The notes beneath the pieces are model-generated. The model was not told the origin of the DNA and did no database searches. It worked only from the letters and a program-made list of their open reading frames with translations. From the NCBI GenBank assembly GCA_000388065.2, contig KB932202.1: a stretch of 15,612 nt of DNA; one strand, 5' to 3'. This DNA is from Fonticula alba ATCC 38817 (Eukaryota > Protista > Nucleariida). Of this stretch, positions 1 through 15,307 are shown in pieces. How positions within the stretch are numbered: position 1 is the stretch's first letter; the number at the start of each line of letters is the position of its first letter. Made by a program: the position numbers and the translations under genes.

Positions 1-4
1 TGTA

Positions 5-36
<32 letters not shown>

Positions 37-80
37 CATGCCTGCGCATGCCTGCATATGCCTGCGCATGCCTGCGCATG
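1..80. repeat. (TG)n microsatellite followed by 4 copies of a 10-bp unit CCTGC(GC/AT)ATG (41-80), inside an intron of the sorting nexin gene
   Basis: Read directly: cctgcgcatg cctgcatatg cctgcgcatg cctgcgcatg. Confidence 0.9.
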
Positions 81-110
81 TGTCGGAAGATGGGCGCCCA
101 AGCGACGTAC

Positions 111-1461
111 CTCGGGAAATGATGCCGCCGAGGGGCTGCTTCTCCGGCAGAGTGGGAACCACCCGGTAGGGGTAGCGCGCGACCAGCTGCGACTCGAGCC
201 ACACAAAGTCCGAGAAACGGCGGACCACGGGCTGACCCTTGGCCGTGTGCTTGCGCGAGGCCAAGTAGTAGAAAGTGGTCCGGAAGAAGGTGCCCGGCAC
301 CTGGGGGTCGTCGGCCGGCGCAATGGCCAGGGTGATGTTGTTGGCGTTGCTGCGGGCAGGGGAGAGGTCAGTGCGGGCGAGGGGAGCAAATGCCACCAGG
401 GGCGAGGGCCGGGCAGGACACACCTGGCACCGCGCGCGGCGCCCACCGGGGGCAGGCTGTTGCCGAGAGTGCCGAGGGAGGCCAACCCCGGGACCGCGAC
501 CGGCTGTGGCAGCATCGCCTGGAGGAGGGCCGGCGATGAGGGGACCGACAGGGCATCCGAGAACTTGGGCACTGGGTCGACAGGACCAGGAGAAGAGAGT
601 GAGAAAGGCCCAGCCGGGAGGGGGCACGCAAAAGGGTCAGTCCATGGTCAAAGGGAGCCGCCCGGCCCCTCGGCCCGGAGGGGAGGGCGGAAGGGAGGCA
701 CGCGCCCGAAGGCTACCCCCCGCCCCCCCCCCCCCCCCCACACACACACAGGCAAGGACACACGCACCGCCGCCATAGAGCCCGGCGTTGAGGGGGGTCA
801 GCGGGCGCTTGGCGCCGGACTCATCGAGGGCCCGGGGGTCATCATCGCGCAGGAATTGCGCAAGCGAGATGAGCTTCAGGGCGAGAGTCAGCTCCTCGCG
901 CGACAGGGACCCGCGCTTGGAGATGTCGGCCATGTCCCAGATCTTCAGAGGCGGGGGTCAGTAATGCGGAGCCAGGAGTCGGGCGGGGGCGAGAAACAAA
1001 GCCAGGCCCCGGCGTACCGAGCGGAGGAGGTCATTGTCGAGACCGGAGCGCTCGAAGAGCGGCCGCAGCCCGGACGCCGGGAAGGTCCCGCACTTGGGCG
1101 TCGGCGGGGCATCCTTCTGGGCGATGGTCTCCAGGAGGGCCTCAAGCTCCCGGAGCTCGGCCTCGCGGGCCTGCCCGGCCGGGCCGGCCACATCCGCGAA
1201 GGGCTGGTCCACATCGGCCACCGGGGCCGCGGCCGCGGCCCGGCGGAACATCGAGCTGGACATCGACGAGGAGGGGGTGCTCGCCGGGGTGGAGGCCGCT
1301 GCCGAGCCCGGGGTCGCCGCCGGGGTGGAGCTGGCCTGGTTCGAGGCGTACACAGCGTCCAAGCCGCGACGCTGGGCGCGATGAGCGCTGGTCGACGGCA
1401 CGGCCGGCGCCGAGGCGATGGGCACGTCGTCGAACGGATCGCCGAAGGGGTTGTCGTCCAT
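111..1461 (-). CDS. SNX8: Sorting nexin, SNX8/Mvp1-like (N-terminal NPF/DPF motifs, EH domain, PX domain); 3'-partial. Exons 1461-1018, 942-768, 571-424, 349-111; the gene continues past the left edge
   Basis: Splicing at GT..AG sites with CTGAC branch points keeps one frame: MDDNPFGDPF...LRPLFERSGLDNDLLRS|IWDMADISKRGSLSREELTLALKLISLAQ (EH domain)...LYGG|VPKF...GA|SNANNITLAIAP...FFRTTFYYLASRKHTAKGQPVVRRFSDFVWLESQLVARYPYRVVPTLPEK (PX signature RRFSDF..L...YP...P.LP.K, closest in my recollection to the SNX8/Mvp1 type). Intron phases (0,1,2) are consistent. The expected BAR domain would lie outside the window. Confidence 0.85.
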
Positions 1462-1498
1462 GATGTGAGGGCCTGGGGCTGCGGAGGGAGGGGGGGGG

Positions 1499-1578
1499 NN
1501 NNNNNNNNNNNNNNNNNNNNNNNNNNNNNNNNNNNNNNNNNNNNNNNNNNNNNNNNNNNNNNNNNNNNNNNNNNNNNN
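1499..1578. other. Assembly gap (80 N) flanked by G-runs
   Basis: N run with poly-G on both sides. Confidence 1.
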
Positions 1579-1650
1579 GGGGAGGGGGGATGGCGGGGGG
1601 GGCGGCCCGGCCCCGCCCCACCGTGGTGGGGCCCCCGTTTTGTCCCCCGG

Positions 1651-1674
1651 CAGCAGCAGCAGCAGCAGCAGCAG
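1651..1674. repeat. (CAG)8 microsatellite, non-coding, upstream of the sorting nexin start
   Basis: Read directly. Confidence 0.95.
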
Positions 1675-2301
1675 CAACCGCAGGGGCTTTGTTGTGGCTC
1701 GCGCGGGGGCGTATCTCCCAGCGTCCGCCTGTGAGCGTGCGGCCCTCCACCGCCGCCACCCCCTTCCTGGGGGAGTGCGCGGCCGCGGCCACAGGTTTTC
1801 GCCGCGGATGCGGTGAGCGTGGGGAGGAAACAACACCGAGGGGGGGGGGGGGGGTCCAAAAGAAAAACACAGAAAATGCTCCGGGGCCCGGTCCGTATGC
1901 CGGCCAGTCGGCCCCTCCGCCTCTGGCCCGGTGTCTCCGCGCCAGGCGAGGGGGAGCCCTGGATGTGGGGATGGGGGCATTTGTCGACGCACTCTCCTCG
2001 GCGTCCTCTCTCTTCGGTGGGAGAGGGGGGGGGAACATGTACCAGCTCGAACCCCCCCCCCGCCCGGAGCGGGGGCGGATAAAAATAATACCGCCCAGGG
2101 AGCGCGTGTGCGCGTGATCAGCTCCGTGACCACACGGGATGCTCGGTGGAGATCAGGCCCCCTGGCGCGATCTAGCGCCCCAGCCGGACGCTCGCGCAAA
2201 GGCTGGCCTCGGACGATCGGCCAGCCGCACCGTCGGCCCGATCCGCATGGAGCACCGCGGCTCAAGTGGCGGACGGGCGGAATGGTGGGAGAGTTCGCCA
2301 C

Positions 2302-2338
2302 CTGCCTCCTCGCTGCCTCCTCGCTGCCTCCTCGCTGC
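2302..2338. repeat. 11-bp unit CTGCCTCCTCG x3.4 upstream of REV1
   Basis: ctgcctcctcg ctgcctcctcg ctgcctcctcg ctgc. Confidence 0.9.
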
Positions 2339-2462
2339 TTCCTGTCGCCTACCCCCCCCCCCGGCCCTTCCTCCAGCCCCCACCCCCTCTACGTCCCCCA
2401 CCCCCTCCACGCCGGTATCCCCTCCACGCCTCCACGCCCCCCACGCTCCCGGCTTTGACGCC

Positions 2463-5400
2463 ATGGACGACGAGCGCCGGCGGTCGCTGACGAGGCGGCC
2501 GCCCAGCCCACCGGACTACATGCGCGAGCGCCGGCGCAAGACGCACCACCAGCATGAGGAGGCGCGGGACCGGATCCGGCAGAGGTCCCTCAAGGCGGAT
2601 GGTGGTGGCGAGAGTGGCGGCCAGTCGGACGCGCTTGCCCGGTGTCGGGTGCATGTGGCCGGGCACACTCGGCCCTCGGGCCCGGAGCTGGAGCGCCTGG
2701 TCTTGCTGCACGGCGGCCACCTTGCGCCCTTCCTCGGGGGTGGCTGGGGCGCGGCCGGCGGCCAGGCGCCCGGTCCGGCCCGGGTGACGCACATCGTCTT
2801 GGACCCGGGGGCCGACCCGGCGGCGGTGGCCCGGCACCTGCTGCAGGGCCCGGACGCGGCGCATCTTGTCACGCCCGAGTGGGTGACCGCCTCGGCGGCC
2901 GCCGGCCGGGCGCTGCCGGAGTGGCGCTTTGCTCCGCCCTCGCGAGCTGGCGCCTCGATTGGCGCCCACTTTGCCCCGGGGGACCCTTCGTCGGGCGACC
3001 GCGCCGCGGCTCACGCCCGGGACCCGGCTGCCGAGGGCCCGAAAGCCGGAGCCACATCCGGCGCCGGGCCATGTCCAGGCACGCGCGCCGCGGACCGGGC
3101 ACAGCCGCTCGCCCCGGCACGGGGGGCAGCTGCGGCCCCGGTCGAGGCATGCACCGAAGACCGCCGGGTGGAGCCTCCCAGCCACCGAGACCAGTCCCAT
3201 GCCCGGGACCGGCAGCCCGACTCGAAGGCATGGCCCGGGGAGGCCCGGCCGGCAGCCCGGCCCGAGCCACCCCTCGCCGCGGGCGCGTCTCCGGACGGGC
3301 GGCCGCATGCCCCGAGCGTCGATGGGGCCCGGCGGCCCGGGGCGTCGCCGGCCATGCCGCCACCGCCGGAGCGCCTGATGGCGGAATGGCTGGCGCGCTT
3401 GCGCCGGCGAGGCCTGCTCCCCTGGTCGACGTCCGCGGGCGAGGGCCTCGGCACGGGGCCGCACGAGCGCTGGTGGGCATTCATCCGGGTGCGAGACTTC
3501 CTGGCCGCGGCCCACGCGCAGTTTTTCCTGGGTCCGGCGGCCGCGCGGCCGCCGGACCTGCCGGTGGTCGTGGTGCATGGCCTGCCGCCGGGGCAGCCGG
3601 CCGCCGACCTGGCGCCAGACCCCCCCCACACGGAGCTGTTGGCGGCGGTGGTGGTGGTGGTGGTGGCCATGAACCGGCCGGCCCAGGAGCGGCTGGGCGT
3701 GCGGCTGGGCGAGCGACTGGCCGACGTGCAGCGGCGTCTGGCCGGCGGCCGGGTGGCTGTGCATCCGGCTGGCGGGGACCACGCCCCGGCCGAGTCGGCC
3801 GAGCCGGTCGCGCTCCATGTCCTGCCCTTCCGGCCGGCGGTGTGTTCGCGAATGTCGGCCGAGGTGGCGGCCGTGCTGCGGGCCGCCGCGCGGGACTTTA
3901 CCGCCGCCGCCGGGGCGCGCATTCGCCTGGCGTGCATCTCCCAGCGCGACATGCTGCTGGAGGTGGTCACGGCCCGTGGTGGTGGTGGTGGTGGTGGTGG
4001 TGGTGGTGGTGGTGGTGGTGGCCCGGGCGGGGGCGATGGCCATGCGCGCCTGCTGGCGCACATCGCCACGGCGGCCGACCGTGGCCCCGGGCCTGGCCGC
4101 CATGCTCTGCTGGTGGGATGCGGTGGGACGGCCACCCTGGCCTTTCTGGCGGCCCTGCGACCGGGCCCCGGCGACACGCCGGAGGACATTCTCCGGCGCG
4201 CGTCGCCGGCGGACCTCGGCCTGCCGGGGTTTCTGTGCTCGGCCATTGAGCAGCGCGTGCTGCTGCTGGCCGGGGCCGTCGAGCCCGGGGCCTCTGCGGC
4301 GCCCCGGCCCCGGGCCCGGGCCCCAGGCCCCCGAGCCCTGAACACGGTCTACCAGGATGCCGAGGCTGCCGGGTCGGGCCGGGCGGCGGGCCCGCCGCCC
4401 GGCCCGACGACACCCAGCACGCCCCCCCTCTCGCTGCTGGAGGTGGCCCGGCACCTGTCGGGACGGGCGCTGGAGGATCTCCTCCGGCAGCACCGGCAGC
4501 GCCTCCTGTCGGCGGACTCCTGCGCCGAGGCCACGGCCAGTCGGCTGTTGGACGCCATGCGCGGCCTGGACACCCCGATGGGCCTGGGCGGGCGGGGGGG
4601 CTCCGGCCCGGCCGGGGGGGCTGACGGGCCGCCGCTGGCCCCGGGCCCGGCCTGTGGTCTGCTCTTTCGCCGGGACCCGGGCGCCCTGCTGGCCGCTCTG
4701 GGCCCCATTGGCCCGGCCCTCACACGGGCCGAGGCCGACATGCTGACCCTGCCGCCGGCGGCCGTGGCGGCTACCACGACCACAGCAGCTCCCCGGGGCC
4801 AGTCCAGCGGCAGCGCCTGGGAGCAGGCCCTCGACTGGTGGTGGTGGCTGCCGGTCGAGAGGTGCCTCTTCCGCCGGCACCGGGCGCGCCTCCTGCGGGA
4901 CCAGCGCCAGCGCCGGCAGTCCAGCCGGGCGGCCGCCCTGGAGCCGGACTACGATGAGGAGGATCTCCTCCGCGAGATGGAGTCGGCCCTGGGCCATGGG
5001 GCTGCCGGCTCGCGGCCGGCCGGCTCGGGCTCCGACACCGGCCCCCGGGCCTCGGCTGCTGCTCCCATTGGGCACGCCCGGCCCCCGGTGATTGTCCCGG
5101 CGCCCCCCGGCCGACCAGCCGGCGGCCCGGTGGCCGCCGAGCCAGGCCCCATGCACAGGGGCTCCCCCCCCTTGCCGCAGGGGGCCGACGGCTCTCCGCG
5201 GGGCCCGAGCGCCGAGGCCGTCGACGCCAGCCCCTCCGGCTGGGGTGCGGCCACCGGTGGCGCGCTGGCCACAGTCCCCCCCCTCAGGCTGGGCTTGCAT
5301 CCAAAAGCCGCGGCCAGTGCTGATTCGGCTCCCGGGCGGCCGCCGTCCGCCGCGGGCAGTGAGCCTGCTTGCTCTCGAGTCCAGGGGCAAGCGGCCCAAG

Positions 5401-6848
5401 CGCCGGGGGGGCCGCCCCGGCCCGGGGCTGCCCTCTTGTCGCCGGGGAAGCACCAAGCCGAAGCACCGATCCCCCGCCGGCCGGCAGATCTTCTGGGGGG
5501 CCTGCCCTGGGCCGACGCGGCTCCGCCGGCGGTCCCGGCAGAAGCGCACACCCTCCAGCGGCAGGCCCCCTGCCAGTCGGAGGCGACACATGCTGGCGGC
5601 CGGGGAGGGGGGCCGGTCCCCGGCGTGCCCGCCGCTCTGGCGGAGGGGCTCCCTCCCTCGACCGGGGCGGGTCTTTGGCCGGGGTCGCCCTCGTCCGGGC
5701 TGGCCCCGGCGCGAGAGACTGCCCCGCGGGAAGCCGGCTGGCTGCCGCCCGGAGGCGAGGCCCCCGGGCGGCTGTCGGCCGTGACCCCGCCGGGCCGGGG
5801 GGCGGACCCACCACCGGCCTGCCTCTCGCCCAGCAGCAGCCGGAGCCCCCCGGCCTCGCCCGGAGGGGCGACATGCGCCCCTCCGGGCGAGGCCACCACG
5901 GGCCACCATGATGTGTCGGCTGCCGCGGCTGGCCACGCCCGGGGGCCGGCGCCCGTGGAGGAGATCCCCGCCGCCACTGCGCCGGAGGGGCTGCCGTGTG
6001 TCTCCCGGGCCGAGGTCGGCCCCGGCCCGGATGCCCCGGGGTCCGGGCTGCCATCGGGGTCCTGCTCACCGGTGGCGGTGTCCAACACCCCGGGGGGGCT
6101 GCTGGCACCGCCACTTCGGGACCTGGACCCGGACACCTTCCTCGAACTGCCGACCGACATCCAAGTGCAGGTAGTTGCCTTTCACCTGGCCGAGGTCCGA
6201 GGGCGACTGGGCTCCCGGGCCGAAGGGCCGGCCGGCATGTGGGCCGGGCTCCGGCCGGCCGATGACCAGCACCTGCCTGTGGTGGCCATGCGGCAGCTCC
6301 TGCGCGATCAGGCCGCCACATTGGAGCTGCTCCGGCGGGTTCTGCCTTGTGTCGGGCGGCCAGCCGCCGAGCCGGCGCCGGGGCCGGCCCCGGCGCCGAG
6401 GGAGGCCACCGCCACCGGCCCGGACGGGAGCCCCCCGGCGCCGGTGAACGCCCAGCCCGGGCCCAACCCGGCATTCGGCCAGGCGGCCGATCGTCTGCTC
6501 GAGCAGCTGTCCCAGGGCCGGCTCCCGCTGCATGCAGGGCTGGCCCTGCTGCGGGCCTGGCGCCGGGCCCTCGACCACGACCACGACCACGACGGCCGGG
6601 AGGGCCCCTGCGAGGCGGACCCGTGCGCCTGCCGCGGCGCCGTCCTGCCGGAGTGCACCCCGCGTGCCGTGGACGATGGCAGTCCCGCCGAGGGCGTCGG
6701 CGAGCCGCCCCGGGGCCCCGCGGCCTGCGTGGCCGCCGCCGGCGCATGCTGCCCCTGGCACTGCCGGGCCCCGGCGTGGCGTTTCGCCCTGGCCCTCGAG
6801 GAAGCCGGGCGACGTCGGTGGGGAAGTCGGCTGAAGCCATCGCACTGA
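2463..6848 (+). CDS. REV1: REV1-like translesion synthesis protein, 1461 aa, apparently intronless; probably catalytically inactive
   Basis: Domain order and motifs match REV1: DYM near the N-terminus; BRCT (VHVAGHTRPSGPELERLVLLHGG...VTHIV...VTPEWVTASAAAGRAL, ~2630-2940); palm/fingers remnants (PDLPVVVV, AMNRPAQERLGVRLG, VLPF, VGCGGTATLAFLA, LPGF); thumb end (RLLDAMRGLD); UBM (DLDPDTFLELPTDIQVQV, ~6120-6185); C-terminal WGSRLK, like REV1 YGSTLK. ATG 2463 was chosen because it puts YM at aa 19-20, as in REV1. The upstream in-frame extension from 2139 looks non-coding. Confidence 0.85.
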   Translation: MDDERRRSLTRRPPSPPDYMRERRRKTHHQHEEARDRIRQRSLKADGGGESGGQSDALARCRVHVAGHTRPSGPELERLVLLHGGHLAPFLGGGWGAAGGQAPGPARVTHIVLDPGADPAAVARHLLQGPDAAHLVTPEWVTASAAAGRALPEWRFAPPSRAGASIGAHFAPGDPSSGDRAAAHARDPAAEGPKAGATSGAGPCPGTRAADRAQPLAPARGAAAAPVEACTEDRRVEPPSHRDQSHARDRQPDSKAWPGEARPAARPEPPLAAGASPDGRPHAPSVDGARRPGASPAMPPPPERLMAEWLARLRRRGLLPWSTSAGEGLGTGPHERWWAFIRVRDFLAAAHAQFFLGPAAARPPDLPVVVVHGLPPGQPAADLAPDPPHTELLAAVVVVVVAMNRPAQERLGVRLGERLADVQRRLAGGRVAVHPAGGDHAPAESAEPVALHVLPFRPAVCSRMSAEVAAVLRAAARDFTAAAGARIRLACISQRDMLLEVVTARGGGGGGGGGGGGGGGPGGGDGHARLLAHIATAADRGPGPGRHALLVGCGGTATLAFLAALRPGPGDTPEDILRRASPADLGLPGFLCSAIEQRVLLLAGAVEPGASAAPRPRARAPGPRALNTVYQDAEAAGSGRAAGPPPGPTTPSTPPLSLLEVARHLSGRALEDLLRQHRQRLLSADSCAEATASRLLDAMRGLDTPMGLGGRGGSGPAGGADGPPLAPGPACGLLFRRDPGALLAALGPIGPALTRAEADMLTLPPAAVAATTTTAAPRGQSSGSAWEQALDWWWWLPVERCLFRRHRARLLRDQRQRRQSSRAAALEPDYDEEDLLREMESALGHGAAGSRPAGSGSDTGPRASAAAPIGHARPPVIVPAPPGRPAGGPVAAEPGPMHRGSPPLPQGADGSPRGPSAEAVDASPSGWGAATGGALATVPPLRLGLHPKAAASADSAPGRPPSAAGSEPACSRVQGQAAQAPGGPPRPGAALLSPGKHQAEAPIPRRPADLLGGLPWADAAPPAVPAEAHTLQRQAPCQSEATHAGGRGGGPVPGVPAALAEGLPPSTGAGLWPGSPSSGLAPARETAPREAGWLPPGGEAPGRLSAVTPPGRGADPPPACLSPSSSRSPPASPGGATCAPPGEATTGHHDVSAAAAGHARGPAPVEEIPAATAPEGLPCVSRAEVGPGPDAPGSGLPSGSCSPVAVSNTPGGLLAPPLRDLDPDTFLELPTDIQVQVVAFHLAEVRGRLGSRAEGPAGMWAGLRPADDQHLPVVAMRQLLRDQAATLELLRRVLPCVGRPAAEPAPGPAPAPREATATGPDGSPPAPVNAQPGPNPAFGQAADRLLEQLSQGRLPLHAGLALLRAWRRALDHDHDHDGREGPCEADPCACRGAVLPECTPRAVDDGSPAEGVGEPPRGPAACVAAAGACCPWHCRAPAWRFALALEEAGRRRWGSRLKPSH
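3978..4019 (+). repeat. (GGT)14 coding repeat (poly-Gly) inside the REV1 palm
   Basis: Pure GGT run in frame, just after the motif III equivalent. Confidence 0.97.
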
Positions 6849-7504
6849 TCATGTGGCCCATTTCAAACATTGATTGCACCATTCGCCCCCGGCGTCGATT
6901 GTGGGGGCGGGAGGCCGCCCGGGTCGGGGTTCTATGCCCGTCCCGCGGGTCGCTGGTGGTCTTGTCCGGCGCGGTGGCAGTTCCGCCCGAGCCCGGGGGG
7001 GGGGGGGGACGGTGCTCCACGGGCCGGGGGGGGCTGTGAGGACCGGCGCGGATTTCAGGAGCCCGTTTCGGGCCCCTGAAAGCGCGCCGATCGCGCCGCC
7101 GCGCGCGCGCGCTTGTGTGTGCGGGAGGACGCCGGCGAAGGAGAAAGCGAGAGAACCCTGCCGGAACAGCGTTGTCCGCGACCCGGCCCCGCCGCGACCG
7201 GCTCTGGCCCGTTCGGTACACGCACACATGGGGAGGAGTAGGGGGACTGTCACTGTTGGGCAGGGGCGCAAGACGGGGGGGGGGGCAACCGTGCGCCGGG
7301 TCGGCTCGGGTGCCGCTCGCGACACCGGCCCCGGGCAGTGTGGCCGCGCCGTCGGTTTCGGCCCCGGGCCCAAGGGGAGCGCCGGGAGATCTGGGTGGAA
7401 AAAAAAAATACATTTCCATCTTTTACCCGGGGATTCTCGGGAAATGGCTCTGGGGATGTGTCCGCCCCGGCCCGAAGCAGAGCCCCCTGTTACACGCGCG
7501 GTGA

Positions 7505-8649: not shown

Positions 8650-9705
8650 ATGAAGTCCGAGAAGAAGTCCAGCCAGACCTCCACCTTCCAGGGTAAGGGT
8701 CGCACTTCTACCTACCATGACGAGAGCTCCGAGAGCCATTCCACCGGCCCGGCCATCGTCATCCCGCCCTTCGACGTGGCCAACGCCCCCCGGTCGCCGC
8801 GGACCCTGAGCAAGAAGGTGCTCAACTCCCCGACCGAGCGCATCATCATCCACCGCGAGGGTGCCGTGGCCCAGGACATGGACTTCGGTGAGGTCAAGGT
8901 CCGCAAGATCGAGGTCAACCGCAGCGAGGAGAGCGCCCTCAATGCCAAGCGCATCGCCGAGGCCCGGGCCAAGATCCTGGAGGCGCAGCGCGTTCGCCGC
9001 GACGAGAGCATCCTGGCGGCCGAGGCCCGCAAGATGGCCGAGACCTCCCTGGAGAACGCCGAGCAGGCCTGCAAGGTGGTCGAGGTCCAGGAGAAGCTCA
9101 AGATGAGCCTCATCGAGAAGGAGCGCGAGTTCGAGCGCCAGCGTGTGGAGGCCCACGAGGCGGCCGTCGAGGCGGAGAACTGCCGCGCCAACGCCCGCGC
9201 CGAGGAGGTCCTCTTCATCGAGCAGCGCAAGGAGGCCCTGTCGCTGGCCGCCAAGCATGAGCTGGCCGCCGAGCATGCCCTCAAGATCGAGAAGGCCTAC
9301 GGCATTGTCCTGGCCGAGGCCGAGCGCCGCCAGGCCATCCTCGTCAGCGATGTCCAGTATGAGGTCATCGGTGAGCTCAACCAGGAGGTCGGCGAGTCGG
9401 CGCGCATTCGCGTCGAGATCGAGCCCCTCGGCATCCAGGAGTCCCGCATGCAGTCCTCGGCCAAGGTCCGCGCCACGGCCAAGCTGGCCGAGGTCACCGA
9501 GCACCTGCCCCAGCACCCGCCGATTGTCGTCCACCCGGAGGCCGTCGAGGCTCGCCGTGTCCACACCGAGACCCACGTCATCACCACCACCAAGTCCGAG
9601 CTGCTTGCCAGCCTGAACAACGAGACCATCGAGGCGGTGGCCCGGCCCATTGCTCACGGCGAGGCGTTTGCCCAACAGCACACCAACCTGCACAAGCACC
9701 TTTGA
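8650..9705 (+). CDS. Uncharacterised 351-aa charged helical/coiled-coil protein (Ser/Thr-rich N-terminus, ~140-aa E/A/K/R-rich helix), probably highly expressed
   Basis: The ORF has a near-exclusive set of preferred codons (GAG, AAG, GCC, ATC, CGC, GTC, ACC). The ATG sits in the A-rich context caacagaATG, downstream of a splice acceptor at 8587. Unlike the neighbouring genes there are no homopolymer tracts. The track ORF start at 8389 lies in the intronic minisatellite. No family recognised. Confidence 0.9.
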   Translation: MKSEKKSSQTSTFQGKGRTSTYHDESSESHSTGPAIVIPPFDVANAPRSPRTLSKKVLNSPTERIIIHREGAVAQDMDFGEVKVRKIEVNRSEESALNAKRIAEARAKILEAQRVRRDESILAAEARKMAETSLENAEQACKVVEVQEKLKMSLIEKEREFERQRVEAHEAAVEAENCRANARAEEVLFIEQRKEALSLAAKHELAAEHALKIEKAYGIVLAEAERRQAILVSDVQYEVIGELNQEVGESARIRVEIEPLGIQESRMQSSAKVRATAKLAEVTEHLPQHPPIVVHPEAVEARRVHTETHVITTTKSELLASLNNETIEAVARPIAHGEAFAQQHTNLHKHL

Positions 9706-11522: not shown

Positions 11523-14500
11523 CTACGATCGGCCCGCGGCGGAGTGGGCGCGCAGTGGCGGCGATACCACCGTGCGCTGGTGCTGTTGCCGCTGCTGCTG
11601 GTGGTGGTGCTGCTGCTGCCGCTGGTGCTGCCGCTGCTGCTGCCGCTGCTGCTGGAGCAGGGCCCGGTAGTCCTGGCAGTCGCGGCTCCGGACGGAGTAT
11701 TCGTCGCGCCAGAGGCACACCGCCGCATCCAGCCCACACGACAGGAGAGCCACATCACCGAAGGGCAGCAGGGCGGTGACCGACTTGTTGTGCGCTGCCA
11801 GGGTCGACAGCAGGGCCGGCACGGGAGCCATGTCGTGCAGGGACACGGCGATGCGCACGTCCGTGCTGTGCGTCTCCAGCGGCGAGCCAATGTCAGGCAG
11901 CTCGCTGGAGGAGCTGGTCGGCGACAGGGTGAGCCCCTGCAGGCGCGTGGCCGCGGCCGTGGCCGTGACCGCCGTCAGGGAGAACCCCCCCGGCGGTGGT
12001 GGCGTCGCCGGACCGGCGGCGACCGACAGGGTGGCAACATGATGGTGCGCCGGCTGCGGCATGGACCCCGGCGAGAGGGCCGCCCCGGTGAAGGGTGTGG
12101 CCAGGAGACCTCCGCCGCCGCCGCCGCCGCCGCCGCCGCTGTTGCTGTTGCTGTTGCTGCCAACACCGCCGCCACCGGTGCTCGGGCGCCTGGACCCCGA
12201 TGAGCTGCCCCTCCCTGGAGCATCCTCCGGGAAGGAGGACGACGAGGACGAAGAGGACAGCGAAGAGAGGGACGACGTGCGGGAGGAGGCAGAGGCACCC
12301 CGGGCACCGGGCAGCGCCGGCTCCACCGCGCAGTAAGCCGTTGACAGGTGCGGCGGCGGCGACGCGAAGACCGATGTCTGCAGGGCGTCCAGGGCATGGC
12401 TGGCTGCCGCGAAGACCGGGCTTCCCAGCAGTGCCACCATTGCCGGGTGGTGGATGGACAAACTCACCGAGGAAGGGCCGCCACCACCGAACCCCAGGGA
12501 GGCAGACCCGCTGAGGCTGGCCCCGGACACGCTCCTCGCAGGGCCGGTGCCGGCGCCGGTGCCGGTGCCAGTGCCGGTGCCGGTGCCGGTGCCGATGGGG
12601 CTGCCACTGTCCCCGCCGCCCCCGGCGCTGGCACCGAAACTGGAGGCAGCCGCCGCCACGACTGCCGGGTCTGCCGACGCATGGTGCTGTAGCACCGACG
12701 AGAGAATCACAAAGTCGCTCGACGGACTGGGCTCCGATGTGTCGGCCCCCCCGGGGAAGAGGGAAACCGGCGAGGACACGCGTGAAGACCGGGCCGAGGC
12801 CGAGGCACTTGCCGGGGGTGGGACATTGCTGGCGCCCACATGGACCGAGCTCGATCGTTGGCGGAGTCCGGCGGCGTCGGCACCGCCGGGGCCGTTCGTC
12901 GGGGCCGCGGACAACGGCGACGAGGCGGAGGACGACGAGGAGGAAGTGAAGACCCAGCCGCCGAAGGGGCCGGCCACTGCCGGCCCTGACGCCGCCGCCG
13001 CCGCCGCCGCCGCCGCCGAAGCACCAGCCGGGTGGGGCTGGCCCGGCAGGCCGGCCTCCGTCACATGGGCCGGAGCAGGCGGCATGCGATGGTGCCCGGT
13101 AAGTGAGGCGCTGCGCACGCGCGAGGAAAAGAGGGAATCCGACAGGCACTCGGTGGATGCATGGGTGTCGATTGGGAAGGCCGGCGGCGACCGGGGAATG
13201 AAGGCATCCGGCCCGAGGACCGCGTCGATACGCTGACGCGGCGTCAGGAAGGCCTCGATGCCGACCTTGGAGCGGGCGTCCGAGAAGGGGTTCCGGGGGC
13301 CGGGGGCCGGGCGCGAAGCGAGGGGGAGAGAGAGGAGGGGAAAATTGCGTGAGAGGAGAGTGAAGAACGAAGAGAGGTACACAAGCGGGGGGGGGGGGGG
13401 GGGGGGAAAAAAAAAACGGGGGGGGACGGGGGGGCGGGGGGGGGGGGGGGGGGGAGGGGGGGGGGGGGGGGGGGGGGAGCAAAAGCAGCCGGCAGCGACA
13501 GCGGACAGGGGAAGGACGACATACCGGCGGCGCGGATAGCAGCTGACACGTGTCATAGGAGAGTAGCAGAGATAGCAGGCGTTTGTTGCTTGGGCGCGAG
13601 AGGGTCTCGGCCACATCGACCCCGGCCGGTACCATGGGCGGCGGCGGCGGCGGCGGCGGCGGCGGGAAGGACGAGGCCCCGGTGCTGGCCGGCGAGCTGG
13701 GCCGCGAAACCGGCCCGGCCGCCGGGCCGCCCATGGCCCCGGCCGACGGGTGCCGCGACAGGGCTCGCCCCGAGAGGGAGCCGGTGCGGGAAAAGGGCCG
13801 GCCACCGGGGTTGGGCGAGGGGGGCGGCCGCGGGCCGCCCAACAGGTCCCCGGAAGACACCGAGCCACCGAGCCCGGAGGCCGCCATCCCCCCGTCAGGT
13901 GGCAGGAAGGAAGTCCCGGAGCCCGGGCGCGAGGGGCCCCCCACATCGAGGGGGTTCACATGGCCCACGGGCTCAGGCTCGCTGGGGGTCGACCCGGCAG
14001 GGCCGCCGCGCGAGGGCGCCGGCGAGTTGGACCCCGACGAGAAGGGGGTCTGCAGCAGGGAGTCCGGGTCGTCGGTGTGCGAGAACGACCGCAGGGACAT
14101 GGCCCGGCGCTTGTCGTACCCCGGCCCGGGGATGGTGGCCGAAGAGTGGCCGCCGGCCGGGCCGGGCCCATGGCCGGGGACCAGGGGCGGGCGACCGGAC
14201 CCGGGCCGGCCGGTGGCCAGCGCCATGCTGGACCCGGATCGCGGGAGGGGCAGCCCGGATCCGCCGGCGTCGGCGAAGGCCGACAGGGTGTCCCCGAAGC
14301 CCGGGGCGGCGTTGCCGACGCCGCTCACCGGCGCCCCGAATGCACCCATGCCCAGGATGGCCTCGGCCGCCGATGCGACCATGAAGTGTGTATGAGCCAG
14401 GCCCGGGGAGGGGGACCATATCCGGATGCTGGAATCATCGCCGATGGTGAGGATCCGCGCGCCGCCATACAGCAGGGCGATCTGCCGCACGCAGGTTTCA

Positions 14501-14600
14501 TGGGCATCTGGCAGAGAAAAGAGGCACTGCCCGGTGCTTGTGTCGCAGAGGGCGATCCCACGGTCGACAGCCACCAGGAAGAAGCGCTTCGTGCATGTGT

Positions 14601-14631
<31 letters not shown>

Positions 14632-15307
14632 CGCGAGCAAGTGCACGACAGAGAAGGCGGTCAGCAGGGCAGGATGAGAGCAGTGCCAGCGCCAGGCTAG
14701 GGAAAGAGGAGGCGAGACGACGGGGCGGGGCCCGGGGGCAAGCATGCACGAATGGCCGGCAGACGCACGTCGTCCACGGGGCGGATGTCGCCGATGGTCG
14801 GCGGCCGCCACGGGCTGCCGGGCAACGACCCGGCCGGGTCAAACAGGCAGTACACCGCCTGCAGAGACTCCGCGCACCAGACCAGCACGAGCCCATCATC
14901 GGACGCCGAGGCAAAGAGGCTGGCAGTGGTGGCGCTCCGGGAGTAGGGGACCGCCGGAGTGCCGGGCGCCACGCCGCGCAACTCCACCAGGTGGTGGATG
15001 CTCTCCCGGTGACTGCCGAGGCTGGACCGGAGCTGGGAGATTGGCACATCCACGGCGGCCAGAGTCAGGGATTGAAGGTGGCCGCGCGGGGTCGTGCGAA
15101 GACAGTCCAACAGCGGTCCGAAGTGGAAGACAGCTGGAGGGGGCGCGGGGCGCGGGGCGCGGGGAGAGTTAGGCGAGGCGGGAGGGGAGCGGAGAAAAAA
15201 CATTCGGAAGACAGGAGGAACGCCTACCGATTTTGGAGTCAGATGCGATGACCACATCATGGCCACTGCCGATGGACACCATGGCGCTGGTGCCTGGGGG
15301 AGGAGGG

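What the first reader, a model, noticed from the sequence alone, without database searches (positions are those of the whole stretch)
3471..3965. REV1 with its catalytic carboxylates replaced: a candidate naturally dead Y-family pseudo-polymerase (eukaryotic analogue of ImuB)
Seen in the sequence: the motif I equivalent reads F-I-R-V-R-D-F-L (Arg342 at 3486-3488) where REV1 has H-V-D-M-D-C-F-F. The motif III equivalent reads I-S-Q-R-D-M-L-L-E-V (Arg495 at 3945-3947) where REV1 has V-S-C-D-E-A-L-V-D-I. Established: these positions are the metal-binding triad (human D423/D570/E571, yeast D362/D467/E468). Two of the three acidic ligands are charge-reversed to Arg, while BRCT, UBM and the C-terminal polymerase-binding domain remain and the 1461-codon frame is intact. 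I could not recognise the little-finger domain after RGLD (~4570). Inference: selection has kept only the scaffold function of REV1 (recruiting Pol zeta and other TLS polymerases), as the inactive Y-family protein ImuB does in bacteria. I do not know of a described natural example in eukaryotes, but I cannot search the literature.
Basis: partly seen in the sequence, partly recalled or inferred. Interest (0 to 1): 0.82.

Follow-up and report, generated by a model that had tools for sequence, protein, structure and literature searches.

The report
REV1 homologue with dead polymerase site
An intact gene of the amoeba Fonticula alba encodes a very diverged relative of the DNA-damage-tolerance protein REV1 that keeps its docking modules but has arginines where the polymerase needs metal-binding acids, so it probably acts only as a scaffold.

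Summary

No standard search recognises a polymerase here: Pfam, phmmer against PDB, and phmmer against 1.84 billion proteins all fail. A Y-family profile I built does find the fingers subdomain (residues 399-479, E 7.6e-7; no shuffle of 4000 reaches it). hhalign (E 1.6e-5, 79%) extends the match over motif I and puts Arg342 and Arg344 on the two aspartates. Three MAFFT alignments and my own dynamic-programming alignment put Arg495-Asp496 on the D-E of motif III, but that placement is not significant by itself.

The BRCT domain (E 3e-7) and one UBM (E 0.002) match a canonical REV1. That REV1 comes from an equally GC-rich gene and keeps every catalytic motif. The C-terminal domain, thumb and little finger could not be confirmed.

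Verdict: a real REV1 homologue whose active site is almost certainly dead. Retention as a scaffold is inferred, not shown. There are no orthologues, RNA support covers only the 3' end, and I could not search the genome for a second REV1 or for Pol zeta. I found no published natural example.

The parts
2463..6848 (+). Whole coding sequence: 1461 codons plus stop, single exon. It equals the public gene model on KB932202.1 of GCA_000388065.2.
   Evidence: The ESM Atlas and the NCBI gene call hold exactly this protein. P(no stop) = 1.4e-6 given position-specific base composition; the other two + frames have 12 and 8 stops.
2514..2555 (+). Possible M1-like helix upstream of the BRCT (residues 18-31, Y-M-R-E-R-R-R-K-T-H-H-Q-H).
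   Evidence: Aligns to Y-I-Q-A-K-I-R-K-L-E-E-Q-H of REV1 P0123, but p = 0.08 against shuffles. The motif is described in bioRxiv 10.64898/2026.01.21.700666. Tentative.
2634..2930 (+). REV1-type single BRCT domain (about residues 58-156).
   Evidence: BLASTP against REV1 P0123: E 3e-7, 34% identity. The only BRCT among the 60 PDB hits listed is REV1 2ebw, E 0.0037. Pfam BRCT_2 E 0.014, below its cut-off.
3366..3401 (+). Possible N-digit remnant (residues 302-313, P-E-R-L-M-A-E-W-L-A-R-L), with R304-L305 opposite the R-L of REV1's S-R-L-H.
   Evidence: MAFFT alignment A3. Not significant, p = 0.17. Tentative.
3468..3518 (+). Motif I equivalent (residues 336-352, R-W-W-A-F-I-R-V-R-D-F-L-A-A-A-H-A). 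R342 and R344 replace the two Asp; L347 sits at the second aromatic position.
   Evidence: hhalign; MAFFT; matrix scan with Asp columns masked gives the top hit of the protein, p = 0.016. The MSA-guided AF2 model has a strand followed by a helix here, pLDDT 64-73.
3657..3899 (+). Fingers subdomain (residues 399-479), containing ..A-Q-E-R-L-G-V-R-L-G-E.. and ..L-P-F-R-P-A-V-C-S-R-M-S... This is the only part with significant Y-family similarity.
   Evidence: hmmsearch --max: 14.4 bits, E 7.6e-7, and 0 of 4000 shuffles reach it. A bacterial-only HMM already gave E 2.9e-4. GC2 is lowest here, 0.53. pLDDT 75-81.
3927..3971 (+). Motif III equivalent (residues 489-503, L-A-C-I-S-Q-R-D-M-L-L-E-V-V-T). 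R495-D496 lie opposite the catalytic D-E.
   Evidence: Same placement in three MAFFT runs and my DP. AF2 gives a beta-hairpin with pLDDT about 80. Not significant on its own.
3976..4020 (+). (GGT)n microsatellite read as a poly-Gly run, directly after motif III. A second (GGT)6, read as Val6, lies at 3647-3664 inside the fingers strand.
   Evidence: read laying skipped both stretches as repeats.
4041..4271 (+). Tentative rest of palm plus thumb (residues 527-603): L-L-V-G-C-G-G-T-A-T-L-A-F-L-A-A-L-R-P-G-P-G-D opposite S-V-G-I-G-P-N-K-L-L-A-R-L-A-T-R-A-A-K-P-R-G-Q, and L-P-G-F-L opposite L-P-G-V-G. The conserved Lys residues are absent.
   Evidence: MAFFT add alignment only. The sub-HMM gives 0.5 bits, not significant. 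pLDDT below 50.
4560..4571 (+). R-G-L-D (residues 700-703) opposite G-L-D-D-R-P of REV1 and G-I-D-E-R of DinB, at the end of the thumb.
   Evidence: My DP alignment and comparison by eye. Not tested statistically.
4776..4862 (+). Rival candidate for the K-P-x-G-Q and L-P segment (residues 772-800, T-T-T-A-A-P-R-G-Q...W-W-W-W-L-P-V-E-R).
   Evidence: Best hit of the motif IV/thumb sub-HMM: 4.2 bits, about 6 of 2000 shuffles reach it. BLASTP lists T-T-T-A-A-P-R-G-Q against T-R-A-A-K-P-R-G-Q. Unresolved.
6108..6176 (+). Ubiquitin-binding motif, UBM (residues 1216-1238, P-P-L-R-D-L-D-P-D-T-F-L-E-L-P-T-D-I-Q-V-Q-V-V).
   Evidence: BLASTP against P0123: E 0.002. Local score z = 9, 0 of 2000 shuffles. 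Atlas features for residues 1200-1461 point to UBM clusters.
6465..6845 (+). Candidate C-terminal domain (about residues 1335-1461). Unverified.
   Evidence: No PDB or Pfam hit. Against P0123 p = 0.27. An Atlas cluster with REV1_C and UBM appears at rank 4 with score 0.60 only. Exact RNA-library contigs lie on 6148-6439 and 6726-6881.

Best explanation
The gene is the Fonticula alba homologue of REV1. It keeps the modules that tether REV1 to the replication clamp and to ubiquitin: an N-terminal BRCT and a UBM, and possibly the M1 helix and the C-terminal domain. Its Y-family polymerase core has degenerated.

The first half of the core (strand 1 to strand 6, palm plus fingers) is still a recognisable and probably folded Y-family domain. 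The motif I aspartates are Arg342 and Arg344. Motif III reads Arg495-Asp496 instead of Asp-Glu. The fingers positions corresponding to DinB Y46 and R49 are Arg405 and Gln408. The second half (rest of palm, thumb, little finger) is beyond recognition.

With at most one of three metal ligands left, two-metal nucleotidyl transfer should be impossible. The protein would therefore act as a non-catalytic adaptor in translesion synthesis, which is what engineered catalytic-dead Rev1 does in yeast.

Shown: identity of the modules, homology of the core, absence of the carboxylates, an intact frame. Inferred: loss of activity, the scaffold role, and that the frame is kept by selection.
For: Architecture: BRCT E 3e-7 and UBM E 0.002 against the canonical REV1 P0123. 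The one BRCT among the 60 PDB hits listed is REV1's. Atlas feature searches return only REV1 clusters for the whole protein, only IMS clusters for residues 300-760, and UBM clusters for residues 1200-1461 (leads only).

Core homology: own HMM E 7.6e-7 with 0 of 4000 shuffles. hhalign E 1.6e-5 covers motif I.

Catalytic positions: R342/R344 and R495/D496. Fingers Y to R405 and R to Q408.

Foldedness: GC2 falls to 0.53 over residues 361-480, as it does at the BRCT. MSA-guided AF2 gives pLDDT 64-81 with the Y-family order of strands and helices for residues 332-510.

Frame: P(no stop) = 1.4e-6.

Control: P0123 comes from a gene of 74.9% GC with the same Ala/Gly/Pro/Arg-rich composition, yet scores 142.6 bits on Pfam IMS with every motif intact. 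Composition alone therefore does not erase the site.

Inverted conservation: between P0123 and human REV1 the core scores 213.9 bits and the BRCT 89.5 bits. In this protein the BRCT is found (18.1 bits against 2ebw, 42 bits against P0123) and the core is not found at all.

Precedent: catalytic-dead yeast Rev1 still regulates Pol zeta (bioRxiv 10.64898/2026.01.21.700666).
Against: Pfam IMS, IMS_C, UBM and REV1_C all fail, even at E up to 10. The motif III placement is not significant alone. The CTD, the key scaffold module, is undemonstrated. The little finger, which carries a PCNA-binding site in yeast Rev1, is not recognisable. There are no orthologues, so there is no test of selection. RNA-library contigs cover only the 3' third, and the library is not proven free of DNA. 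Presence of REV3/REV7 in this genome is unknown. Scan notes list many 'catalytic residue replaced' calls in this genome, so general rapid divergence could be inflating such readings.
Confidence: 0.6

Rival explanations
1. Decaying relic: a former REV1 gene no longer under selection, whose frame is still open because stop codons are rare in 78% GC DNA. It is annotated as a gene but has no function.
For: The core is degraded far beyond the catalytic residues; thumb and little finger are unrecognisable. Two (GGT)n microsatellites sit inside the core. Long spurious ORFs occur in other frames of this DNA, for example 1195 aa on the minus strand with no Pfam hit. There is no RNA evidence over the core.
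Against: Given the position-specific composition, 13.5 stops are expected in 1461 codons and none is seen (P = 1.4e-6); the other + frames have 12 and 8. BRCT and UBM are still significantly REV1-like. GC2 dips mark domain-like segments. Exact RNA-library contigs lie on the 3' part and run across the stop codon.
Confidence: 0.15
2. Subfunctionalised paralogue: F. alba also has a canonical, active REV1 elsewhere, and this copy is a duplicate that kept only adaptor functions.
For: The rest of the genome could not be searched. Other notes of this scan for the genome mention no REV1 or Y-family gene, but coverage is partial.
Against: phmmer with residues 40-800 against 1.84 billion representatives, a library drawn from the collection that holds this genome's gene calls, found no relative at all, so there is no paralogue sharing this BRCT. 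A published screen of the F. alba proteome shows no F. alba entry in its REV1 tree; the other basal opisthokonts are missing from that tree too, so this is weak.
Confidence: 0.1
3. Still an enzyme: the alignment is misleading, other acidic residues (D345, D496, E500 or residues in the unaligned half) build a working metal site, and the protein retains some nucleotidyl transferase activity.
For: D345 and E500 lie next to the replaced positions. The motif III alignment is not statistically secured, and a second placement of motif I exists.
Against: Every alignment tried leaves the motif I Asp column without an acid: R342, or A350 in the alternative. Motif III keeps at most one acid. The fingers Tyr and Arg, and the tentatively aligned motif IV Lys residues, are also gone. 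From established knowledge, mutating these carboxylates abolishes activity in every Y-family polymerase studied.
Confidence: 0.05
4. Not REV1: an unrelated BRCT- and UBM-containing disordered protein whose polymerase-like stretch is a chance match in Ala/Leu/Arg-rich sequence.
For: Pfam and single-sequence searches see no polymerase. Several weak, mutually exclusive matches in the C-terminal half show how easily such sequence imitates motifs.
Against: The fingers match has E 7.6e-7 and beats all 4000 shuffles, including shuffles that keep local composition. It lies exactly between the independently located motif I and motif III candidates and downstream of a REV1-type BRCT. The three Atlas part-searches agree.
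Confidence: 0.05

Closest known systems
Eukaryotic REV1 (deoxycytidyl transferase and TLS scaffold; e.g. human REV1 PDB 3gqc, yeast Rev1 2aq4 and 8tlq, metagenomic REV1 P0123)
   Same: Same order of modules: possible M1 helix, single BRCT, Y-family core, UBM, C-terminal tail. BRCT and UBM are significantly similar. The fingers and motif I region are homologous.
   Different: Motif I reads R-V-R instead of D-x-D and motif III reads R-D instead of D-E. The fingers Tyr and Arg are replaced. Thumb, little finger and CTD are not recognisable. Only one UBM was found, against two in P0123. Pfam IMS fails, whereas P0123 scores 142.6 bits.
Engineered catalytic-dead Rev1 (yeast rev1-cd, D467A/E468A type)
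   Same: The polymerase site is disabled while the interaction modules are present. The engineered protein still stimulates and restrains Pol zeta (bioRxiv 10.64898/2026.01.21.700666).
   Different: The laboratory mutants change two residues in an otherwise intact core. Here the change is natural, charge-reversing, and accompanied by erosion of the whole C-terminal half of the core.
Bacterial ImuB (inactive Y-family protein of the ImuA'-ImuB-DnaE2 mutasome; reviewed in PMC3901139)
   Same: A Y-family homologue without the catalytic carboxylates that is thought to work as an adaptor between the clamp and another polymerase.
   Different: ImuB is bacterial, sits in an operon, uses a beta-clamp motif, and has no BRCT, UBM or REV1-type tail. 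The relationship is independent loss of activity, not shared descent. None of ImuB's defining context applies here.
Other non-catalytic polymerase roles (Pol kappa and Pol eta scaffold functions: bioRxiv 10.1101/2023.11.06.565773, PMC3597682)
   Same: Y-family proteins acting through recruitment rather than synthesis.
   Different: Those enzymes keep intact active sites. The non-catalytic role is an added function, not the only one left.

Membership tests
REV1 | Single N-terminal BRCT domain of the REV1 type | tested here: met
   BLASTP against REV1 P0123: E 3e-7 over residues 63-156. The one BRCT among the 60 PDB hits listed is REV1 2ebw, E 0.0037. Pfam BRCT_2 is sub-threshold, E 0.014.
REV1 | Y-family (IMS) palm and fingers domain | tested here: met
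   Own 19-sequence HMM: 14.4 bits, E 7.6e-7, 0 of 4000 shuffles. hhalign: 78.9%, E 1.6e-5. Pfam IMS itself gives no hit at E up to 10, so homology is shown but the curated family threshold is not reached.
REV1 | Catalytic carboxylate triad (yeast D362, D467, E468) | tested here: not met
   R342, R495 and D496 occupy these columns. The alternative motif I placement gives A350.
REV1 | N-digit with the Arg-Leu pair that pairs with dCTP and evicts template G | tested here: inconclusive
   MAFFT puts E-R-L (R304, L305) opposite S-R-L of P0123, but the local score has p = 0.17.
REV1 | Thumb (HhH) and little finger (PAD) | tested here: inconclusive
   Two mutually exclusive weak candidates for motif IV/thumb, 0.5 and 4.2 bits. 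No PAD match. AF2 pLDDT is below 50 after residue 510.
REV1 | Ubiquitin-binding motif(s), UBM | tested here: met
   Residues 1216-1238 against the UBM2 of P0123: E 0.002, z = 9. Pfam UBM gives no hit. Only one copy was found.
REV1 | C-terminal four-helix domain that binds REV7 and RIR motifs | tested here: inconclusive
   No PDB or Pfam hit. p = 0.27 against P0123. P0123's own CTD is equally undetectable, so the test has no power.
ImuB-type inactive Y-family protein | Y-family fold lacking the catalytic carboxylates | tested here: met
   As above. This is a resemblance in working principle only.
ImuB-type inactive Y-family protein | Bacterial imuA'-imuB-dnaE2 gene context and a beta-clamp-binding motif | tested here: not met
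   This is a eukaryotic nuclear gene. It is flanked by an EH/PX/BAR gene and by a WD40 gene whose WD40 matches are split across two reading frames, as expected if it has introns. The protein carries BRCT and UBM instead.

The most novel reading that the evidence does not exclude
This is the first natural eukaryotic Y-family pseudo-polymerase: a free-living opisthokont has given up REV1's dCMP transferase chemistry altogether and kept the protein purely as a TLS adaptor. If so, the catalytic activity conserved from yeast to humans is dispensable in nature. Together with the dead-helicase RECQL4 noted elsewhere in this genome, it would suggest that Fonticula has converted several DNA-damage enzymes into scaffolds.
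Probability: 0.45. Interest if true: 0.65.

Novelty: new variant of a known kind. Interest (0 to 1): 0.55.

Why it matters
REV1's scaffold role explains most of its biology. Even so, its unusual dCMP transferase site is conserved across the eukaryotes studied, and why is still debated. A lineage that has naturally replaced the metal ligands while keeping BRCT and UBM would be a natural separation-of-function allele. It would show which parts of the core are needed for scaffolding; here the N-terminal palm and fingers survive while the thumb and little finger do not. It would also allow a direct test of whether abasic-site or G-quadruplex bypass, which use the catalytic activity elsewhere, are handled differently in this organism. 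There is a practical lesson too: standard domain searches miss this gene completely, so surveys that report REV1 as absent from a lineage may be missing degenerate copies.

Tried and rejected
1. Pfam on the whole protein, on six sub-pieces and on other-frame and antisense ORFs gave no IMS, UBM or REV1_C hit and no alternative gene.
2. phmmer against PDB with the core in two pieces and with the C-terminus returned only noise.
3. A word-indexed search (residues 1-620) and full phmmer against 1.84 billion representatives (residues 40-800) found nothing except one poly-Gly artefact, a Cdc6-like ATPase.
4. Single-sequence AF2 gave pLDDT 35.6 and was unusable.
5. Searching with E. coli DinB to collect Y-family diversity returned only 87-99% identical enterobacterial DinBs and was wasted. 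I replaced it with 12 plasmid Y-family genes.
6. A profile search whose first row was the 1461-aa protein yielded the REV1 P0123 and four other eukaryotic Y-family proteins.
7. hmmalign aligns only the fingers. Command-line hhalign failed on input format, so I used the protein comparison instead.
8. Foldseek of the MSA-guided model hits yeast Rev1 first, E 2.3e-4. I discount this as circular, because the MSA was made of Y-family proteins.
9. Shuffle tests of the M1 helix, N-digit and CTD against P0123 were not significant.
10. Read laying gave no coverage of 3471-3965, so the Arg codons could not be checked in reads. Most laid pieces were 21-28-base low-complexity matches.
11. P0123 and P0127 are not from Fonticula.
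12. The REV1 and REV3 trees in the supplement of PMC11061109 contain no F. alba entry, but no other basal opisthokont either, so they are uninformative.
13. I rejected an alternative motif III at residues 654-660 (P-L-S-L-L-E-V). It needs a 170-residue insertion, and it also lacks the Asp.
Full report
**What is there.** The window is 64-80% GC. The record is KB932202.1 of assembly GCA_000388065.2. I recall that assembly as Fonticula alba; a paper cites GCF_000388065.1 under that name, and earlier follow-up notes of this scan name the same organism. An open frame runs from 2139 to 6848.

The protein is 18% Ala, 14% Pro, 13% Gly and 10% Arg, with almost no Lys, Asn or Tyr. Residues 340-347 read F-I-R-V-R-D-F-L and residues 492-501 read I-S-Q-R-D-M-L-L-E-V, at exactly the stated coordinates. 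The codons are CGG (R342), CGA (R344) and CGC (R495), each 2-3 changes from an Asp codon. Given the position-specific base composition, 13.5 stops are expected in this frame and none occurs (P = 1.4e-6). The other two + frames have 12 and 8 stops. Antisense and off-frame ORFs have no Pfam match.

**Standard recognition fails.** Pfam finds no IMS, IMS_C, UBM or REV1_C, even at E up to 10, and only a sub-threshold BRCT_2. phmmer against PDB finds poly-Gly linkers and one real hit, the REV1 BRCT 2ebw at E 0.0037. The core and the C-terminus find nothing. A word-indexed search and a full phmmer scan of 1.84 billion representatives find no relative. Single-sequence AF2 is useless, with pLDDT 35.6. 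ESM Atlas feature searches pointed to REV1 clusters for the whole protein, to IMS clusters for residues 300-760, and to UBM clusters for residues 1200-1461, all with scores of 0.81-0.85. These are leads only.

**Building a test.** I took E. coli DinB and 12 diverse plasmid Y-family genes. I then ran a profile search whose first row was the 1461-residue protein, so that only long proteins were candidates. This returned a canonical REV1, P0123: 1273 aa, from a JGI metagenome, with BRCT, IMS at 142.6 bits, IMS_HHH_1 and IMS_C. It also returned four other eukaryotic Y-family proteins. P0123 aligns to human REV1 3gqc at 213.9 bits. Its coordinates against yeast 8tlq fit D362/D467/E468.

**REV1 identity.** BLASTP of the window protein against P0123 gives the BRCT at E 3e-7 (34% identity, residues 63-156) and a UBM at E 0.002 (residues 1216-1238, D-P-D-T-F-x-E-L-P). 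The UBM local score is 9 standard deviations above shuffles. To my knowledge, a BRCT, then a Y-family core, then a UBM is an architecture found only in REV1. A possible M1 helix (p = 0.08), N-digit (p = 0.17) and CTD (p = 0.27) are not significant. P0123's own CTD also finds no PDB REV1 CTD, so that test has no power.

**The core is homologous.**
- A bacterial-only HMM already scores residues 399-425 and 450-479 at E 2.9e-4 with Z=1. No full shuffle of 2000 and only 1 of 2000 block shuffles reach it.
- With the eukaryotic sequences added, residues 399-479 score 14.4 bits, E 7.6e-7. No shuffle of 4000 reaches that; the highest is 10.0.
- hhalign against alignment A2 gives 78.9% probability and E 1.6e-5 over residues 332-478. 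It puts R342 and R344 on the two Asp columns and F346 on the invariant Phe.
- Three MAFFT alignments agree.
- A motif I matrix with the Asp columns masked has its best hit in the entire protein at residues 336-352 (p = 0.016).
- In the HMM alignment, the fingers Tyr and Arg (DinB Y46, R49) face R405 and Q408.
- GC2 falls to 0.53 over residues 361-480, as at the BRCT and UBM. This is typical of folded rather than disordered segments.
- AF2 run with alignment A3 gives pLDDT 64-81 for residues 332-370 and 399-510, with the Y-family order of strands and helices. This is partly circular, as is the Foldseek top hit to yeast Rev1.

**Motif III and beyond.** R495-D496 fall on the D-E columns in all three MAFFT runs and in my own semi-global DP. 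The hairpin is modelled at pLDDT of about 80. The flanking context is not significant by itself, ranking fourth. The same DP prefers a second placement of motif I, with F354-F355 as the aromatic pair. That puts Ala350 on the Asp column, so the conclusion that there is no acid holds under both placements.

After the poly-Gly run the alignment is ambiguous. MAFFT's candidate for motif IV and the thumb (residues 527-603) is not significant. A rival, A-A-P-R-G-Q...L-P-V-E at residues 772-800, reaches p of about 0.003. No little finger is detectable.

**Controls.** P0123's gene is 74.9% GC and its protein has nearly the same skewed composition, yet it keeps every motif. GC pressure alone therefore does not explain the loss. 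Between canonical REV1s the core is conserved better than the BRCT, at 213.9 against 89.5 bits. Here the BRCT is detectable and the core is not. That pattern is what relaxed constraint on catalysis, with continued constraint on docking, would produce.

**Expression.** Two small 2012 libraries labelled "RNA?" hold exact contigs on 5915-6068, 6148-6439 and 6726-6881, the last crossing the stop codon. Nothing covers 3471-3965. The other pieces are short low-complexity matches. This is weak support for transcription and no check of the Arg codons.

**Literature.** Four searches found no natural catalytically dead REV1. Catalytic-dead yeast Rev1 still regulates Pol zeta, and an M1 helix lies 10-20 residues upstream of the BRCT. 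A survey that screened the F. alba proteome shows no F. alba entry in its REV1 or REV3 trees. The other basal opisthokonts are absent from those trees too, so this says little.

**Verdict.** This is a true REV1 homologue with a dead polymerase site. I put that at about 0.8. That the protein is maintained as a scaffold is plausible but untested, so overall confidence is 0.6. The resemblance to ImuB is one of working principle only.

Noticed in passing
window 3647-3664, 3976-4020, 4836-4847: The same GGT/GTG/TGG trinucleotide repeat occurs three times within the gene and is read in three different frames: Val6 inside a fingers strand, a Gly run of about 15 right after motif III, and Trp4 in A-L-D-W-W-W-W-L-P. 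P0123 also has a Gly run at the post-motif III position.
   Followed up: partly
window 2349-5936 (- strand) and 4-1734 (+ strand): Very long open frames (1195 aa antisense to the REV1-like gene; 576 aa antisense to the upstream gene) have no Pfam match. They look like by-products of codon structure in 78% GC DNA. This is a warning that ORF length alone is weak evidence in this genome.
   Followed up: partly
window 11523-15282 (- strand): A WD40-repeat gene (1074-aa public model) has WD40 matches split across two reading frames, as expected if the gene has introns.
   Followed up: no
window 8650-9705 (+ strand): A 351-aa public gene model lies inside a 438-aa ORF and has no Pfam family and no recognisable relatives.
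   Followed up: no
window 6573-6593 (residues 1371-1377): A D-H-D-H-D-H-D repeat sits inside the putative C-terminal domain. It could bind metal, or it could be another microsatellite product.
   Followed up: no
P0122 (Micractinium tetrahymenae, 1475 aa): This gene model contains two complete Y-family cores (about residues 48-485 and 761-1165). Either two neighbouring polymerase genes were fused by annotation, or it is a real tandem.
   Followed up: no
same genome, other pieces (scan notes): The scan holds 81 notes of the 'catalytic residues replaced' kind for this genome, including a followed-up dead-helicase RECQL4. Either Fonticula is unusually rich in pseudoenzymes, or its extreme divergence makes readers over-call them. 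A genome-wide control would settle it.
   Followed up: no
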